Source: Hyphochytrium catenoides
Lineage: Eukaryota; Protista; Hyphochytriomycota
Direction: 5' to 3'
DNA length: 64,000 nucleotides
Assembly (NCBI GenBank): GCA_900088475.1
Contig: FLMG01001546.1
Span: 1 to 64,000, forward strand
Below are positions 55,730-63,363 of the stretch, in pieces (the stretch's first letter is position 1; every line of letters begins with the position of its first letter). The notes under the pieces were generated by a model, which was not told the DNA's origin, made no database searches, and saw only the letters and a program-made list of their open reading frames with translations. The translations under genes and the position numbers were made by a program.

Positions 55730-58700
55730 ATGGACGGCCCTGAGGTAAGACCTACTATCACCTAATAGGCACCGTAATACTGAAAGTATTCAACGGCCCA
55801 TTTTAGGCACTCATCGGCCTCCGAAGCCAAGTGGCTCTGCACGCAGAGGAGCTTCTAAGGTACAAACTGACCTGCAACATCAGCGCTTCGTGCATATCTG
55901 AGACTAAGACTTTATGCCTGACAGTAACCTCATCTCCTTGCGGAGTCGCAAACTTCAGAGCCAAGATGTGAAGCCTCAGGACGCCATTGGAAAAACTTCG
56001 GCGGCTGTCGGTGCCAAGGTGGGTGGAGAGCATACTAACTCACGCTTCATGCTCCTAAGAGTGAATATCAATGCGACGCAGGAAACGGCCCGGCCACCAA
56101 CTTGGAAAACACCTTTGACAGCTAACCTCTCTAACCCACCACAGGCAAACGCCACTGCAAAGCCAGCTCCTGTATCTACAAGTCAAGCCGTACAGTCCGA
56201 TAGCCGACCTTTGCCTGGAACAGCAAGGCCGACCCCGGGTAGTGAAAGTGCAAGAAATGGCTCCATTCAGCCGCCTAGCAATGTGGCATACGGACCGCCA
56301 ACGGAGAAAGGTCCCACTCCTGGGCGGCCACCCTTTGTACCCGCGGTCAAGCAAGCTAGTGCGCAGGACAGCAGTATCAAGGAGAAGGCACCTCCGCAGA
56401 GCCTGAACGAGACCAAATCCGGCACAATGGCTCGCGGTGCTGCAACTTCTTCAGTCGTGATTCAGAGCAGTCCCAGTCGACCTCGTCCGGCTCCTATGGT
56501 GAAGTCTTCTCCATCTACCTATAATGCGGATCGAAAACAGAGCACACAGGCCCCCAAAAGCCAGAATGGCCCTTTCAGGGGAGCGAGCACCTCGCGTATC
56601 GCGTCCATTCCTCCTGGGTCCAATGGGGGCGTGCCTGGGGAAAAGAAAGGCATTGGCGACGCCGTCGCTGTAGAGGCGGTAATATAAATTCTATGTGTTC
56701 TGGTAGCCTAACCTTCCTAATTACTGGTCCCTTTTTCGTAGAAACTGACCCCGGAAGAGCTTGTAGCTAAAATTGGTAGCATGAAGAAGCGTCTGAATTC
56801 TCTACAAGCTAAAAGTGGAGCTCCCATGCTCGCTCAACTTGAACCGCCAAGGAGGAAATCGCAATGGGATTTTGTCTTAGAAGAGATGGTAACGTGTTTC
56901 CCTTCCAATGTCGCAATTTCCTTCTAATTCTTTGGTATCTTGTTGAGCAGGCGTGGATGGCGAATGACTTCCATGAGGAACGACAGTGGAAAATTTTCAC
57001 AGCTGCTCGACTGGCTCGGGAAGCTGCAGCAAAGAACCAAGCTGAAGTGGTGGGTCAGGCCTTTCTTTATTCTTAATCTATCCAGGCCTAGAAGCTCACA
57101 TTTTTCCTTTAGCTTTTTGAAAGGCAACATCGAGAGTTGGCCCGCAATGTTGCAGGGAAAGTAAATACCTTTTGGCGGTCAATGGAGAGAGTAGAGTTTC
57201 TCACTCGGATTGATCGGCAATCTTACCGAAAGGTGGGCGACGCATCAAAGCTATAGGGATACGGGTTGTCACCTTCTGACCTATGTTTGACAAATACAGC
57301 CTCATGGAGGGACTATCGGTAGGAAGAGGCCCCTAGAGCAAGCGTCAAGTGGGAAGAATTTGGAGAAGAGCTATGCAAACGGACCTACGGGTTCCCTCTC
57401 CAGTCCTGCTAACCCCCTAACCGAACGGAAGCGACAGGACAAGCCTACTAGTGAGATGCCGGATAGTGTTCAAAAGCTGTTAGACTCGATATGGAAAGCC
57501 AGGGAGCTGGCGAACAAACAGAGTTCTGACACAGAGTACGAGAGACAGACATTATCAGCTATTGGGCCTGAGTTGGCTGCTTACCAGGTAGAGGCGGTCA
57601 GGTTCATCCGTAGCCTACATACGCAGGGTTACGGTGCCATCCTAGCCGACGAGGCAGCACTGAATAAGGCAATTGCCGTCTCAGCCTACGTGAGAGTGGC
57701 GAGCTCATGCTCTAGCGATCGGACAGAGGACGCCTTCGTTAGACCTGACACCGTGGTTTCGGCATTATTTATTGTCCCAGAGAGTTCGCTATCAAAGTGG
57801 GCCTTCTCTTTGAGCACATTGTGCCCGCAACATTCTCTCTTTGTGTTGCATAGTGAGGATAGGGACCGCTCCCGGGTTGTGGCGCAGATGACGGAAGCGA
57901 TCGGGGGTTCTTTGGATACCCCAAAGCGGATTAGAATGGCTTGCGTTGCTTCCTACAGATCCTTCCTGCGTAACTTGGGCTTCCTTAGCCGGTTAGGCTG
58001 GTCTCTGCTGGTGCTAGAAAGTACTTTAATCCAGCCAGCCTACATCAGAGCGTCGAAAGACGAGCCAAGTCGAACGGTTTCCGCCTTAGATGCAGAAGTG
58101 AACGCAGTGAACGTACTGACGCCGGAAGTATGGGACGCCCTAGCCAAAATCAAGGCTGCCTACCACTTAGTACTGTCGGACAAGGATGTCCCAGTAGATC
58201 AAGACACCCTTGTACGATGGGGCCGCTTTCTTCTCCCTGTAGGAAGCCTCGACGACAAGTTGTTAGAGTCAAGTGAGGCGCCAACTCCTAGGTCGTTTGA
58301 AGGACATGAGCCCGGACTTATTGAAGGACAATCCGCACTTCGAGCTGCTTTGCTGTCGCTGTCCCTAAGGCGAACCAACGCCGGGCTCAAATCCCAGCTA
58401 CCCATAGCCCAGGAGGAGCCTATGGCTTGCAAGTTAACTGGGTCGCAGATTGCTCAGTATGGAGACGCTCTGATGAGCTCTTCGCTAGTGTCTATTGACG
58501 GCCTTGTCCACCTCGTCCTTAGGCTACGGGGTCTCTGCAACAGTGTGGACTTCTTGAGCCACGAGAGGCTTGCTGCTGCCGATATCAACAGCATGCTGGC
58601 AGCCTCCGGCAAGCTGAGCGTGCTGTCCTCTCTGCTGGAGCGACTCGGTGCGGAGAAGAGGAAGGTCGCTATCTATGCACAGATGGGAGAAGCTCTCGAG

Positions 58701-61315
58701 ATGCTGGAGGTGTTTCTCTCCCTGAAAGGGCTGACCTATGTCCGTATTGTTGGAGACATAACCGCTCAGCAACGAGGTCTTGTCCATTTTGCATCCAAGG
58801 AGAAGGTCTTTGTGGCGCTTCTGTCGACAAGAAGTTCCAACCACGACGGGAAGAATGCTGCCAGAGTTTTTGGGGCTAGTGCAGTTATAGTCTTCGATAG
58901 TGATTGGGACCAGTCAGTTGAGAGCAAACTGCAGCTGAGCTGGCAAGAGATGGCTTCGTCAAATCCCTTAAAGGTCTATAGACTATTTTGCGAAGGGACA
59001 GTAGAGGCTTCTTTAGCCAAGTCGGGCTTCTGTCTCTCACAGCGTCTATTCGTTGAATACGCGCCAAGGGAGTTCTTCATCGGTGGCTCTGGCGGTATGA
59101 CCATTGAGACCATCCAGGGGGCCGTTGAGGCTGCTGTTCTGGAACAACCACCGCCTTGGTGGGTTGCAGTGACCGCTCAACAGCTGCTAGACGTGGCAGG
59201 GGATGTCGAAGAGCACTACAACCTGACTACCACCCTTTCTAACGCTCTTCGGGGTGGCAATCTCTCAGAAGCAGAGGAAGCTATTCCAAAGTGTGAAGAC
59301 CTGAAAGGCGTGGAATGGTATGCGTTACGTTGGTTAGAGAGCTCGCTAGCGGAGGAGAAGCAGGAAGCTAATCAGAGGGCAGAGGAAATGCTGGAGGTTG
59401 CTCCAGTTGTGAAGCCTTTTCCTTGGACAAGGTTCAACGAGGAACTTTTCTACGACGTTTCTGCATCTTCAGATGTCTTTACCGCGTACAAACATGAACT
59501 TCACCGCTTAGAGCAGAGAGGAGTCCAGCACTATCTATCTATTTATTTGCCACCAGCAATACTCTATCAAGACGTAGGAGAAGCAACTCAATTTGCGAAA
59601 TCACCCCATCTTGGACCTCGGACAGAGTTTGATATTCTATTCAGGAAGGTTTTGGTGCCGAAGCCTGTCAGGCCACCAACGAAGCCCTTGGAGAGCGATA
59701 CAGTTAAGCCTAAGGTCAAAAAGACCAAGAAAACTGGTGCGACAGTCCCTGAAGAGACCCGAAAAAGGAAGCGCAGCGTCGAAGGGAGTGGGCAGACCGA
59801 CCGGAAGAAGAAACAGTCGAGGTCTGATTCAATTGATAGTATACCATTCTCTGGTCTGAGCGACTTGAACGAGGACGAACTTATTGCCGACAGCCTTCTG
59901 TCAGGAGTAGGCAAGGCGATGACTTCAAAAGCAGAGTCTAAGCAGTCGGTCAAGGTGCCCAAAGCTGGAAAGGCGAGTAAAAGGAAAGGAGATGACACTA
60001 AGAATAAGGAGGCTTGGACTACGCTTGAGGACCTCTACATCAAGCAGGGCGTTGAGGCCTACGGCCCCAATTGGGCCCTCATTGCCGATATTATCAACAC
60101 TCGATGCAAAATCGCAGGCGGTAGAAGGCGCTCTGCGAAGCAGTGTGCAGAGCGCTTTTCAGAACTACAGGCTCAACCAAAGGATAAGGTCAAGCAGAAA
60201 GAGACACCAGCCAAGTTTCTCTCTCTTCTTGCTCAGAAGACCCACCTTCTGCATGGAGTTGAGCCTATGGAGAATGCCTGGCTGCCAGCGACACAATTGA
60301 GCTTACCCCACTCGGCGGTTACAGCAACGATGACGTCTTCGTTTTCCTTTGCCAATCTCAACGGGGTTGCATCTGTGCCTCCAGCTCGGGAAAATGACAG
60401 GAGAAGGCTGTACAATGTGTTTGATCACATCCTTAGATGCTGGAAGGCTCGGCCGGTGCCACCATCCGTCCCTGGAACGGATGATCCTAGAGTGGCCATT
60501 GCAAAACCACACGCATCCCACGCACAAGCTGCTGCCAATGCAGGCGCAGTGAAAACTGTGCTGACCCCCGTGCAGCTCCTAGAGCTCAAACGTAAGTCAA
60601 AGGATTTATCCAGAGCCGCGACCTCTACGAATGAGTCGTTAGGCACTACCTCGTTTGGGTCATCTGCGCTATCAAGTAAGCTCCTTCATAGAATGTAGAA
60701 TATGAACTCAAGATTGAGACAAAGATATCTCTAACCATTTGTATTTTCTGTGTTACTGCCTTGTCCCGGCATCCATTTCGCGTCCTAATTTCCTGCCTAC
60801 CTTCAAAGCAAACTTGTCACGCCTTGAATCCTCGTTACGGCGGTCTCCTCATATGATTGGCTCGAGTAATGGGCATGATGTCAGCGTAAGTCACCCTTTG
60901 CGGTTCTATTGTGGCCTCCCAACTGAACACAAATGCTTATCCGTCTAGTCTTCTGGCTCGATGCTGGACAGTGCGTCTCTAGCCACGGCCCAGATGATCA
61001 CGGACCAAAACTCGATCAATCTTGGTAAGGGCTGCCCGCTACGTATAAAGAGCTTGCTACATGCGAGCACTAATAGCACCTGAATCTCCTCTATTGTTGC
61101 TCCTGTCTTCAGCTCAAAACACTGTGTCGGCGTCCCATGGTGGTAGTATGAACGTGACAACGTCTACGTTATTCTATGTGATTGAGAAGGTACCTGAGAT
61201 CAAGTCGCAGATTCAGTCCGTCCTTCAGCGGAAAGACTGTACAGAGGCGCAAAAGGTGGAGATGATTGCCAGGCTGCTAAAGTCGACCAATCATGCCACG
61301 ATGGGAAAGCCTTGA
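55730..61315 (+). CDS. EP400/SWR1/Eaf1-like chromatin scaffold: HSA + degenerate SNF2 ATPase + SANT/Myb, ~10 exons
   Basis: HSA: EPPRRKSQWDFVLEEM|AWMANDFHEERQWK...VNTFWRSME. SNF2-like order: YQVEAVRFI, GAILADE, LFIVPESSLSKW, LRRT...QLP, LRLRGLCNS, SGKLSVLSSLL, KVAIYAQM..LEMLEVFL, LLSTR, VIVFDSDW, VYRL..EGTVE. SANT: WTTLED...GPNWALIADIIN...RSAKQCAERF. Confidence 0.88.
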
Positions 61316-61585: not shown

Positions 61586-62767
61586 TTAGTCGCTGAGGTC
61601 CATTGGGGCTGGTCCGTACGCGGGCGAAGCAACTTGCGAAGGAGACGCTCCAGGCGAAACTGTAAGTGACGGAGTTGAGGAGGGAGCAGCCGACGCCATA
61701 GTGGCGGGAGACCTACTACCATCAAAGCCTAAATTTTTGAGATACTGCTGGCGAATCTGCATCTGGCTCCGCACCAGGCGCTGTTGCTGCTCTGTCGAGT
61801 CGTAAATAGACTGAGGGGGTACTTCACTTAGTCTTTGTCGTATGCTTTCTTCTTGTCGCATCCTCTCTTCTTTCTGCTGAAGCAATTCGGCTTGATATTC
61901 CTCCTCCATCTCCGCGTACATTTCATCTAAATTGCGCTCAACCATGTCCAAAAATTCTTGGCGGGTGTGCCATAGACGGTCTCGTTGCAGGACCGTGTAT
62001 TCGTGATGCGTAGGAATAAGGATCACCTTGGCTTCTTCATCAAAGTCTACGTGCTTCTTGACCTTTTTGGAGGTGCTAGGTGTTATAGCAGCTCCATCTC
62101 TAGCGCCACCTGACTTGGAGTCTATCCCCATGGAGGCCAAACTCTGACCTGCGTCATCCTTACAGCTCTCGAGATCCTCCAACTCCGCAACCGCATTAGC
62201 CTCAGCGGGTCGTTTGTCCCCGGCATGGGAGCCCTCCTGCCGTGCTCGAGTTGTCGTGCTGTCAGGCTCTTCTGTTGCGGGGCTACCTCCATACCATCGT
62301 GTGATCCTAGAGAGAAGTCCCACTCCTCCGCGTAATGCATTCGGATGGCGATCTTCTCCACCTTTCACCTTCACCCTGATACCCTCACTGGCAGCTTGCC
62401 GACGCGCTGATTCCCTTTGCATTTGCCTCTTGGATTCTTCAATGCCCAGGTTGGCCATGTACTGCTGTCTGATAGCGCGAGGGTCTCGTCTTGCGGTAAT
62501 GAGTGGTCGCGGGTTAGGGGCCACAGATCCAACTCCAGCGGACGGAAGCTGAGGAGGAGGAAGCTGGAAACCTCCAACTCTCGGCAAATCCGGGGGTGGT
62601 CCGGTATCTTCTTCCGCATCAGGAGGACAGACAGGTAAACTCTTTCGCTTCCGCTCAGGACTCTGATCTATACCAAGTATGGCACTACCGCTTTGGTACA
62701 AATCTCTCCCTAAACTCTGTAGCTCATCATTGTTGATGTTTCCGTGTGGGGAAAAGCGGTACGACAT
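61586..62767 (-). CDS. Hypothetical protein with an RVxF-like motif domain
   Basis: Intronless ~393-aa ORF with KKHVDFDEEAKVILIPTHHEYTVLQRDRLWHTRQEFLDMVERN and a duplicated IRQQY(M/L)xNLG motif. Confidence 0.75.
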   Translation of the reverse strand: MSYRFSPHGNINNDELQSLGRDLYQSGSAILGIDQSPERKRKSLPVCPPDAEEDTGPPPDLPRVGGFQLPPPQLPSAGVGSVAPNPRPLITARRDPRAIRQQYMANLGIEESKRQMQRESARRQAASEGIRVKVKGGEDRHPNALRGGVGLLSRITRWYGGSPATEEPDSTTTRARQEGSHAGDKRPAEANAVAELEDLESCKDDAGQSLASMGIDSKSGGARDGAAITPSTSKKVKKHVDFDEEAKVILIPTHHEYTVLQRDRLWHTRQEFLDMVERNLDEMYAEMEEEYQAELLQQKEERMRQEESIRQRLSEVPPQSIYDSTEQQQRLVRSQMQIRQQYLKNLGFDGSRSPATMASAAPSSTPSLTVSPGASPSQVASPAYGPAPMDLSD

Positions 62768-63363
62768 TTTTATCGGAAGATGCGACAACGAAGTCCGCTC
62801 ACCTCGATTCTTGCTTCACCTATACGTGGAGCCCACACTACAGATTATAAAAGTCATCCTCCCTAGGGTCAGCAGAAAAGCTGAGCACCTCTCCGGTCTG
62901 TTCCTTTCTGAAGCTAGCCAGGAAACAGTGCGATCCAAAAGGAACTCTTCAGCCAATCTTGCAATCATCAGCTGCCTTAGGTACTGAATCTTGTAGCTTT
63001 CTCTGTTCGGGCGTTGACTTTTGAGGGGCTAGGAAATCATGACGACGGCCTCATGAGATGGCTCCAGTGCTGCCTGCGCCCAACTTCGCGACCTGATGCT
63101 CCCCCGTCCGTTTCGTGCCTTTTGAAGAGAAGAATCGCTTTAGTGCGTGAACTCATCAACCAGCGCTGCCCTGCTGATGAGTCCCGGTTGACTGCTGAAG
63201 AGCATTGAGGAAGGTGGAGAACAGGCAGATATAACAGTTCATGTGACCTGGGATGTGGTTGCCCAATGCCTCAAGGCATTTATTCATAATATCCATATTA
63301 TTCAACCGGGATAACCTTTGGGAAGTGTTGTACTATTGACGATAACTGTACATGTTTGTAGTC

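What the first reader, a model, noticed from the sequence alone, without database searches (positions are those of the whole stretch)
55730..61315. EP400/SWR1-like protein with a catalytically dead SNF2 ATPase: possible intermediate between p400 and Eaf1
Seen: the whole SNF2 fold is retained in an open frame but each catalytic motif is altered. Walker A reads GAILADEAALNKA (canonical GILADEMGLGKT, ~57633-57671). Walker B reads LLVLES (canonical LILDEAH, ~58005). The motif VI region reads DSDWDQSVESKLQLSWQEM (canonical DSDWNPxxDxQAxDRAHRIGQ), so the arginine fingers are lost. HSA and SANT look intact. Known: yeast Eaf1 (NuA4 scaffold) is HSA+SANT without an ATPase, Swr1 has HSA+ATPase, and animal p400 and plant PIE1 have all three. 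Inference: this is a pseudo-remodeller acting as a NuA4/TIP60-type scaffold, supporting origin of Eaf1-type proteins by ATPase decay.
Basis: partly seen in the sequence, partly recalled or inferred. Interest (0 to 1): 0.72.

Follow-up and report, generated by a model that had tools for sequence, protein, structure and literature searches.

The report
Dead-ATPase p400-like chromatin scaffold protein
This protist gene encodes a p400/SRCAP-like chromatin protein that keeps the motor's shape but has lost every ATP-burning residue. The same dead version is conserved under selection in all sampled oomycetes, so it looks like a natural half-way form between the animal p400 remodeller and the yeast Eaf1 scaffold.

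Summary
Window 55731-61315 (+) is an intact 10-exon gene of about 1639 aa. It encodes an HSA domain, a two-lobed SNF2 fold and a SANT domain. In the SNF2 fold, motifs I, II, III and VI are all destroyed.

It is not a pseudogene. About 17 orthologue clusters exist, covering all major oomycete orders plus four unnamed environmental sequences. All share the architecture and the dead motifs. Between Peronospora and Phytophthora, dN/dS is about 0.08-0.09 in lobe 2 and 0.17-0.24 in lobe 1.

Family profiles hit human SRCAP and EP400 best in the PDB, about 80 bits above INO80. The HSA profile hits only EP400, SRCAP and Eaf1. For the SANT profile, Eaf1 is the best one-stretch match.

Unlike SWR1 and EP400, the family lacks the long insert between the lobes that docks RUVBL1/2.

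The same genome, probably Hyphochytrium catenoides, has a separate canonical SWR1 with no SANT found. It has no other HSA+SANT gene. Tra1 and MYST acetyltransferase genes are present.

Best reading: a pseudo-remodeller serving as the NuA4/TIP60-type scaffold of Pseudofungi. The scaffold role is inferred, not shown. The lobe-2 phylogeny is unresolved. The link to the origin of fungal Eaf1 is analogy only. I found no paper describing this.

The parts
55731..56678 (+). Exons 1-3 (55731-55745, 55807-55859, 55925-56678). N-terminal region of about 274 aa, low-complexity and rich in S, P and A. The 5' end is not verified.
   Evidence: Manual GT-AG model with consistent frames. No Pfam hit. No RNA run was listed.
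56742..57232 (+). HSA domain across exons 4-6 (56742-56888, 56951-57049, 57113-57232).
   Evidence: Pfam HSA hit at 56939-57028, 22.7 bits, or 23.1 with its neighbours. All invariant HSA residues of the family are present: WD..EM.W.A.DF..ER.WK ... FWR..ER. The family HSA profile hits only EP400, SRCAP and Eaf1 in the PDB.
57300..60675 (+). Exon 7, the large exon that carries the pseudo-ATPase and SANT.
   Evidence: Open frame 57291-60695. The GTAAG donor is at 60676.
57561..58259 (+). Pseudo-ATPase lobe 1 (RecA1-like).
   Evidence: Pfam SNF2-rel_dom aa 75-179. The AF2 model shows strand-helix alternation. The profile is collinear with EP400 724-1370.
57633..57671 (+). Degenerate motif I (Walker A): GAILADEAALNKA, against GILADEMGLGKT in active relatives.
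   Evidence: The control is the genome's own SWR1.
58005..58022 (+). Degenerate motif II (DExH box): LLVLES, against LILDEAH.
58587..59039 (+). Pseudo-ATPase lobe 2 (RecA2-like), the best-conserved part of the protein.
   Evidence: PDB phmmer gives EP400 and SRCAP 81 bits over aa 408-557. It holds 29 family-invariant residues. dN/dS is about 0.08-0.09.
58896..58952 (+). Degenerate motif VI: DSDWDQSVESKLQLSWQEM. Both arginine fingers of DRAHRIGQ are lost.
59142..59339 (+). Conserved post-ATPase segment (PPWW ... EAEE ... VEWYAL).
   Evidence: Invariant W600, E640, L648 and W653 in the family alignment. No Pfam family.
60006..60182 (+). SANT/Myb-like domain.
   Evidence: Pfam Myb_DNA-bind_6 3e-8 and Myb_DNA-binding 1.2e-7. 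The family SANT profile's best single-stretch PDB match is yeast Eaf1 647-723 at 5.9e-10.
60809..61315 (+). Exons 8-10 (60809-60885, 60949-61024, 61113-61315 including the stop). The last exon carries a family-conserved C-terminal motif of about 45 aa.
   Evidence: Manual splice model. The family consensus PVTTSTLLHVLDRMPEIK.KIQ.ILNR.DCSE.QKVAMIARLL matches the window's C-terminus.

Best explanation
The gene encodes a pseudo-remodeller. It is a member of the SWR1/SRCAP/EP400 branch of SNF2 proteins. It has kept the HSA domain, both RecA-like lobes and the SANT domain. It has lost all residues needed to bind Mg-ATP and hydrolyse it (motifs I, II, III, VI). It has also lost the inter-lobe insertion that docks the RUVBL1/2 ring.

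This state arose before the split between the window's organism and the oomycetes, and it has been held by purifying selection since.

By inference, the protein works like Eaf1 or EP400 as the platform of a NuA4/TIP60-type acetyltransferase complex:
- the HSA helix would recruit actin, Arp4 and the Swc4/Yaf9 module;
- the SANT region would contact Tra1/TRRAP;
- the dead motor would be kept as a rigid docking or nucleosome/DNA-binding module that no longer translocates.

H2A.Z exchange would be left to the separate canonical SWR1 gene.

Shown here: the dead motifs, the retained fold, family-wide conservation and selection, the EP400/SRCAP/Eaf1-type HSA and SANT, and the genome context. Inferred: membership of the complex, and what the dead domain does.
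For: Motifs:
- Motifs I, II, III and VI are degenerate in all 17 aligned family members. Several lack even the Walker lysine.
- The genome's own SWR1 has canonical motifs.

Fold:
- AF2 gives pLDDT 76.8 and pTM 0.81.
- Foldseek top hits are all SNF2 motors at E about 1e-23. EP400 has the highest query TM-scores, 0.43 and 0.45.

Family:
- 17 proteins score below 1e-30, then scores drop sharply to generic SNF2.
- Named members come from Aphanomyces, Albugo, Lagenidium, Pythium, Globisporangium, Peronospora and Phytophthora.
- Of the six members scanned with Pfam, five have HSA, five a weak SNF2 match, and all six Myb/SANT.

Selection:
- Peronospora destructor against Phytophthora fragariae gives omega 0.08-0.09 for lobe 2, 0.08 for the linker, 0.17-0.24 for lobe 1 and 0.15-0.21 for the flanks.

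Affinity:
- The whole-family profile scores SRCAP 288 bits and EP400 282 bits. INO80 scores about 204, yeast SWR1 198 and all others 166 or less.
- The HSA profile hits EP400 at 4e-23, SRCAP at 1e-20, Eaf1 at 6e-8, and nothing else.
- The SANT profile hits Eaf1 at 6e-10.

Genome context:
- The only real HSA loci are a Brm-like gene, SWR1 and this gene.
- The only other hit to the SANT query is an R2R3 Myb.
- No SANT was found downstream of SWR1.
- Tra1, three MYST loci and a weak EPL1 hit are present.
Against: - There is no expression or interaction evidence. No RNA run was listed, and the supplement of the P. sojae DMAP1/TIP60 paper is not held.
- The lobe-2 phylogeny is unresolved. The careful mixture-model tree does not join the family to the SWR1-like clade. 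Constrained trees with SWR1-like (+5.9 lnL, p-AU 0.62) and with INO80 (+3.6 lnL, p-AU 0.58) are both acceptable.
- The missing inter-lobe insertion could mean descent from a non-split SNF2 rather than loss.
- Most oomycete members keep GxGKA and a Glu at motif II, so nucleotide binding without hydrolysis is not excluded for them.
- dS is about 1-1.5, near saturation, so the omega values are approximate.
Confidence: 0.7

Rival explanations
1. It is a divergent but still active ATPase or remodeller, a second SWR1/p400 enzyme.
For: The two-lobe fold is intact. Lys is kept in ..NKA here and in GxGKA in most oomycetes. A Glu is kept at motif II in many members. DSDW and STR are invariant.
Against: - In this protein the P-loop glycines are A and N, and the Ser/Thr is Ala.
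- The motif II Asp is Leu, and motif III is gone.
- Both motif VI arginines are replaced.
- Four members (P0010, P0012, P0013, P0025) lack the Walker Lys, so the family's conserved function cannot depend on it.
- Pfam Helicase_C falls below its cut-off.
Confidence: 0.04
2. It is a decaying pseudogene or an annotation artefact.
For: The catalytic motifs are lost. No RNA run was listed.
Against: - There is an 1135-codon open frame, and nine GT-AG introns keep the frame.
- Intact orthologues occur across the oomycete orders.
- dN/dS is 0.08-0.24 across the dead domain.
- About 40 residues are invariant across the family.
Confidence: 0.02
3. It is a dead-ATPase scaffold, but not of NuA4. It could be an accessory or regulatory subunit of the SWR1 or INO80 complexes, or of a lineage-specific complex, for example competing for the actin/Arp4 module.
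For: The HSA type is shared with SRCAP. The overall profile's best hit is SRCAP. No biochemical data tie it to an acetyltransferase.
Against: - The SANT is of Eaf1/EP400 type. In the solved NuA4/TIP60 structures this domain contacts Tra1/TRRAP (established knowledge).
- The Rvb-docking insertion that builds SWR1/INO80-type complexes is absent.
- It is the only HSA+SANT gene in the genome, while Tra1 and MYST genes are present.
Confidence: 0.17
4. The architecture is convergent. A non-split SNF2 domain, not of SWR1/EP400 descent, was inserted between the HSA and SANT of an Eaf1-like protein and then died.
For: The lobe spacing is that of unsplit SNF2 proteins, about 24 aa from CN to SGKL. The free careful tree places the family near non-split sequences, with weak support of 48/21.
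Against: - The profile score is about 80 bits higher for SRCAP and EP400 than for INO80, and more than 115 bits higher than for any non-split family.
- HSA through lobe 1 aligns to EP400 as one collinear stretch.
- The best likelihood found has the family joined with the SWR1-like clade.
Confidence: 0.07

Closest known systems
EP400 (p400) / Domino-A / plant PIE1: HSA-ATPase-SANT remodellers of TIP60/SWR1-type complexes
   Same: The domain order is the same, HSA then SNF2 then SANT. The HSA profile's best PDB hit is EP400 (4e-23). The whole-family profile aligns collinearly to EP400 724-1370 and scores 282 bits. Lobe 2 scores 81 bits to EP400.
   Different: All catalytic motifs are dead. There is no long inter-lobe insertion, which in EP400 is the RUVBL1/2 docking site. 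The protein is much shorter, about 1640 aa.
Eaf1 (yeast Vid21/Eaf1, plant EAF1A/B): the NuA4 platform with HSA+SANT and no ATPase
   Same: It has an HSA of the same type (Eaf1 hit at 6e-8) and a SANT of the same type (Eaf1 647-723 at 6e-10). It has no catalytic capacity. It is the sole HSA+SANT gene, and it sits beside a separate SWR1, as in yeast.
   Different: It keeps a folded two-lobe SNF2 domain of about 500 aa between HSA and SANT, under strong purifying selection. Eaf1 has none.
SWR1 / SRCAP: H2A.Z-exchange ATPases
   Same: SRCAP is the best overall profile hit at 288 bits. The HSA type is shared.
   Different: SWR1 and SRCAP are active, carry the Rvb-binding insertion and lack SANT. 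The genome's own orthologue at G000:C3053 shows all of this.
Hda2/Hda3: inactive SNF2-like domains in the yeast HDA1 deacetylase complex
   Same: They are a precedent for a catalytically dead SNF2-type domain kept as a structural or DNA-binding module in a histone-modifying complex. The Pfam HDA2-3 model hits lobe 2 at 37 bits.
   Different: The HDA2-3 hit is generic, since an active INO80 also scores 34.9 bits. Hda2/3 have no HSA or SANT and end in a coiled coil instead. This protein is not a member.

Membership tests
SWR1/SRCAP/EP400 subfamily of SNF2 ATPases | Two-lobe SNF2 (RecA1 + RecA2) fold | tested here: met
   AF2 pTM 0.81. Foldseek E about 1e-23 to CSB, INO80, BRG1, SNF2h and EP400. 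PDB phmmer about 1e-22.
SWR1/SRCAP/EP400 subfamily of SNF2 ATPases | Catalytic motifs I (GxGKT), II (DExH), III (TGTPLQN) and VI (QAxDRAHRIGQ) | tested here: not met
   All four are degenerate here and in every orthologue aligned. They are canonical in the genome's own SWR1.
SWR1/SRCAP/EP400 subfamily of SNF2 ATPases | Long insertion between the lobes (the RUVBL1/2 docking site) | tested here: not met
   About 24 aa separate CNSVD from SGKL. The model has no inter-lobe insert. The genome's own SWR1 and SWR1-like hits have a motif II to lobe 2 gap of about 400 aa, against about 195 here.
SWR1/SRCAP/EP400 subfamily of SNF2 ATPases | N-terminal HSA of the SWR1/EP400 type | tested here: met
   The family HSA profile hits only EP400, SRCAP and Eaf1 in the PDB. 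The window's HSA exon alone hits only EP400, best E 0.011.
SWR1/SRCAP/EP400 subfamily of SNF2 ATPases | Closest sequence relatives are members of the subfamily | tested here: met
   The profile search ranks SRCAP at 288 bits and EP400 at 282 bits, against INO80 at 204 and non-split families at 166 or less.
SWR1/SRCAP/EP400 subfamily of SNF2 ATPases | Phylogenetic placement of the ATPase domain inside the subfamily | tested here: inconclusive
   The quick LG tree places the family at the SWR1-like polytomy. The careful C20 tree is unresolved. Constraints with SWR1-like (p-AU 0.62) and with INO80 (p-AU 0.58) are both accepted.
Eaf1/EP400-type NuA4/TIP60 platform | HSA plus a downstream SANT domain in one polypeptide | tested here: met
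   Pfam HSA and Myb/SANT. Eaf1 is the SANT profile's best one-stretch PDB match. The orthologues share the architecture.
Eaf1/EP400-type NuA4/TIP60 platform | One such gene per genome, distinct from SWR1 | tested here: met
   There are three true HSA loci in G000, namely a Brm-like gene, SWR1 and this gene. The only other hit to the SANT query is an R2R3 Myb.
Eaf1/EP400-type NuA4/TIP60 platform | Physical assembly with Esa1/TIP60, Epl1, Tra1/TRRAP, Arp4-actin and Swc4/DMAP1 | not testable with these tools
   Only the presence of partner genes could be checked: Tra1, MYST x3 and a weak EPL1 hit.
Eaf1 proper (fungal/plant) | No ATPase-like domain between HSA and SANT | tested here: not met
   A folded pseudo-ATPase of about 500 aa lies between them.
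Hda2/Hda3 pseudo-SNF2 | A specific match to Pfam HDA2-3 with the Hda2/3 architecture | tested here: not met
   The 37-bit hit covers lobe 2 only. The same model hits an active INO80 at 34.9 bits. The architecture differs.

The most novel reading that the evidence does not exclude
The last common ancestor of many eukaryote groups had a single p400/PIE1-type protein with HSA, ATPase and SANT. Separate SWR1 and Eaf1-type scaffolds then arose repeatedly by duplication followed by complementary loss. On this view the Pseudofungi froze the scaffold copy at the stage where the motor is dead but still folded. They did so because the dead motor gained a new essential role, for example ATP-independent nucleosome or linker-DNA binding that positions the acetyltransferase. 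That would make it a living model for how Eaf1 arose, and the first pseudo-enzyme remodeller in a HAT complex.
Probability: 0.3. Interest if true: 0.78.

Novelty: new variant of a known kind. Interest (0 to 1): 0.62.

Why it matters
The relation between SWR1, Eaf1/NuA4 and the fused animal TIP60-p400 complex is a long-standing question. Auger et al. 2008 proposed that p400 arose by fusion of Eaf1 and Swr1. The opposite view is that the fused form is ancestral and later split.

This family is a natural protein with the p400 architecture whose motor has been dead yet strongly conserved for the whole history of the oomycetes. It shows that a p400-like protein can persist as a pure scaffold, and that the ATPase fold has a selectable role that needs no catalysis.

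A 2020 review states that clear Eaf1 and Epl1 orthologues are missing in alveolates, and suggests that NuA4 is poorly conserved outside opisthokonts (PMC7339932). This family gives a candidate NuA4 platform for part of the stramenopiles.

The question can be tested in Phytophthora sojae, which is genetically tractable and where a DMAP1-TIP60 interaction has already been studied (PMC11725902).

Tried and rejected
- RNA evidence: the look-up of sequencing runs listed no run. Expression and the splice model remain unverified.
- The word-index protein search found only weak generic SNF2 hits. The exhaustive representative search was needed to find the family.
- The ESM Atlas feature search gave only generic SNF2 clusters.
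- Contig look-ups for the environmental members P0011 and P0014 gave no taxon.
- The two weak HSA hits at C3288 and C1843 are chance matches. The SANT-like hit at C927 is an ordinary R2R3 Myb.
- The lobe-2 phylogeny was tried three ways and does not resolve the origin.
- DBINO (an INO80 marker) was not found in the genome, but that search also found nothing in its control genomes, so it says nothing.
- The supplement of the P. sojae DMAP1 paper, which lists interactors, is not held.
- Literature searches for a described dead-ATPase Eaf1/p400 protein found nothing.
- Exons and the large exon were searched by reference, so the full-length model was not searched or folded as one piece.

Full report
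**1. The observation**

The region is a eukaryotic gene with short GT-AG introns. I placed the exons by hand at 55731-55745, 55807-55859, 55925-56678, 56742-56888, 56951-57049, 57113-57232, 57300-60675, 60809-60885, 60949-61024 and 61113-61315. Every junction keeps the frame. The product is about 1639 aa.

The large exon holds an open frame of 1135 codons.
- GAILADEAALNKA at nt 57633-57671
- LLVLES at nt 58005-58022
- DSDWDQSVESKLQLSWQEM at nt 58896-58952

Pfam scores for this protein:
- SNF2-rel_dom reaches only 39.6 bits, with the best stretch covering 92 of 290 positions.
- Helicase_C reaches 16.4 bits, below its cut-off of 23.5.
- Myb/SANT is clear at 32-34 bits.

HSA lies in exons 4-6. 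Active relatives score 283-305 bits for SNF2-rel_dom and 87-95 bits for Helicase_C. The same genome's SWR1 gene at G000:C3053 carries textbook motifs I, II, III and VI. The degeneration is therefore specific to this gene and is not a lineage habit.

**2. The fold is kept but the insertion is not**

An AlphaFold2 model of ORF residues 60-625, built with 14 orthologues, has mean pLDDT 76.8 and pTM 0.81. It shows two alpha/beta lobes. Foldseek against the PDB returns only SNF2 motors at E about 1e-23. EP400 gives the highest query TM-scores, 0.43 and 0.45.

The distance from the CN motif that ends the protrusion to the SGKL that opens lobe 2 is about 24 residues. This is the spacing of unsplit SNF2 proteins. 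The genome's own SWR1 and the SWR1-like hits have a gap of about 400 aa between motif II and lobe 2, against about 195 here. The insertion that docks the RUVBL1/2 ring in SWR1, INO80 and EP400 is therefore missing. That role of the insertion is established structural knowledge.

**3. It is a conserved family, not a pseudogene**

The exhaustive search of 1.84 billion representatives found 17 proteins with E below 1e-30, at 30-38% identity. Scores then drop sharply to generic SNF2 proteins at about 1e-25.

Named members come from Aphanomyces euteiches and A. invadans, Albugo candida, Lagenidium giganteum, Pythium insidiosum, Globisporangium polare, Peronospora destructor, and Phytophthora fragariae, P. 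rubi and P. kernoviae. Four further members are unnamed environmental sequences. The sources call them hypothetical, 'Myb-like domain-containing' or 'HSA domain-containing'. One is called 'E1a-binding protein'.

Of the six members scanned with Pfam, five have HSA, five a weak SNF2 match, and all six Myb/SANT.

The motif alignment shows that the dead state is shared by the whole family:
- Motif I reads GMGKA, GLGEA, GLDQV, GMGQA and similar. Four members lack even the lysine.
- Motif II reads LVVEN, LVADI, LIAQS or LIVHA.
- Motif III is unrecognisable.
- Motif VI reads DSDWxAxCDAKLRASWAK, without the two arginine fingers.

By contrast DSDW, STR, the KxxxY.Q of motif IV and about 30 other lobe-2 positions are invariant.

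I compared codons between Peronospora destructor (L043) and Phytophthora fragariae (L044):

| Region | omega |
|---|---|
| Lobe 2 | 0.08-0.09 |
| Linker/brace | 0.08 |
| Lobe 1 | 0.17-0.24 |
| Flanking regions | 0.15-0.21 |

dS is about 1-1.5, so these values are approximate. The direction is clear all the same. The dead motor, and above all lobe 2, is the most constrained part of the protein.

**4. What it is related to**

A profile of the whole family against all PDB sequences gave these scores:

| PDB protein | Bits |
|---|---|
| Human SRCAP | 288 |
| Human EP400 | 282 |
| INO80 | about 204 |
| Yeast SWR1 | 198 |
| ISWI, CHD1, DDM1, SNF2, CSB | 166 or less |

For EP400 a single stretch runs from the HSA through lobe 1.

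A profile of the family's HSA hits only EP400 (4e-23), SRCAP (1e-20) and Eaf1 (6e-8 to 2e-4). It hits nothing else in the PDB, not even Snf2, Sth1 or INO80. A profile of the SANT region has yeast Eaf1 647-723 as its best single-stretch match (6e-10). EP400 is also present at 8e-4.

Trees of lobe 2 are less helpful. The family is a long-branched clade with 100% support. In a quick LG tree it attaches at the SWR1-like polytomy. Two of that group's members, a plant PIE1-like protein and an amoebozoan protein, carry HSA, ATPase and SANT. A careful LG+C20 tree leaves the attachment unresolved. Forcing the family together with the SWR1-like clade gives the best likelihood found (+5.9 lnL, p-AU 0.62). 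Forcing it together with INO80 is also acceptable (+3.6 lnL, p-AU 0.58).

Membership in the SWR1/SRCAP/EP400 branch therefore rests on profile scores, HSA type and domain order. It does not rest on a resolved tree.

**5. Genome context**

G000 has 61.0 Mb in 4759 records. The published Hyphochytrium catenoides assembly has 4758 scaffolds plus a mitochondrial genome (PMC5795050). I take the organism to be H. catenoides, but I did not verify this by sequence.

- The genome has three real HSA loci: a Brm-like gene (C4216), the canonical SWR1 (C3053) and this gene.
- No SANT was found downstream of the SWR1 ATPase.
- The only other hit to the SANT query is an R2R3 Myb.
- Tra1, three MYST acetyltransferase loci and a weak EPL1 match are present.

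So this is the only candidate for a NuA4/TIP60 platform in the genome, and the H2A.Z exchanger is encoded separately.

**6. Mechanism**

Shown here: no catalytic residues, a retained fold, strong constraint, and HSA and SANT of the EP400/Eaf1 type.

Inferred from the solved NuA4 and TIP60 structures: the HSA helix recruits actin/Arp4 and the Swc4/Yaf9 module, and the SANT region contacts Tra1/TRRAP. Without the insertion, no RUVBL ring would be recruited, as in yeast NuA4.

The constrained dead motor most likely serves as a rigid docking surface or as an ATP-independent DNA or nucleosome clamp. The inactive SNF2-like domains of Hda2/Hda3 in the HDA1 deacetylase complex are a precedent. The Pfam HDA2-3 hit itself is generic.

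**7. Novelty**

Four full-text literature searches found no description of a dead-ATPase p400/Eaf1 protein. The P. sojae DMAP1/TIP60 paper states that NuA4 assembly in oomycetes is unknown. A review notes that clear Eaf1 orthologues are missing in alveolates.

I rate this a new variant of a known kind. The evolutionary claim, that Eaf1 arose by ATPase decay, is supported only by analogy. This is an independent stramenopile lineage, and the state is ancient and stable rather than transitional.

**8. Limits**

- No RNA run was listed. Exons 1-3 and expression are unverified.
Exons were searched by reference.

Noticed in passing
window 61113-61315 (+): The last exon encodes a motif of about 45 aa (TSTLFYVIEKVPEIKSQIQSVLQRKDCTEAQKVEMIARLLKSTN). 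It is conserved at the C-terminus of the family members that reach the C-terminus, and it matches no Pfam family.
   Followed up: partly
window 59142-59339 (+): A post-ATPase segment with invariant W600, E640, L648 and W653 (PPWW ... VEWYAL) is conserved across the family. It has no known domain assignment.
   Followed up: no
G000 (whole assembly): G000 has 4759 records and 61.0 Mb. The published Hyphochytrium catenoides assembly has 4758 scaffolds plus a mitochondrial genome (PMC5795050). The organism is probably H. catenoides, but this was not verified by sequence.
   Followed up: partly
L036 (G000:C3053:4000-13999, minus strand): The canonical SWR1/SRCAP-type gene has a very long acidic, internally repetitive region between HSA and the ATPase, with several copies of a unit like 'DDE(A/T)TI..AE(R/K)E...EEI..L..D.E.P..ELRA.Y'. 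An open frame with a WW domain follows downstream (L036:1913-2203).
   Followed up: no
G000, whole genome: The Pfam DBINO model (an INO80 marker) gave no hit in the genome. The search also found nothing in its control genomes, so this does not show that INO80 is absent.
   Followed up: no
G000:C4216:48032-49258 and 58519-58755 (minus strand): A Brm/Snf2-type gene, with HSA about 90 aa upstream of an active SNF2 domain, lies roughly 9 kb from the genome's only (weak) EPL1-domain hit on the same contig.
   Followed up: no
window 61586-62788 (-): A 400-aa open frame on the opposite strand lies immediately downstream of the gene. It was not examined.
   Followed up: no
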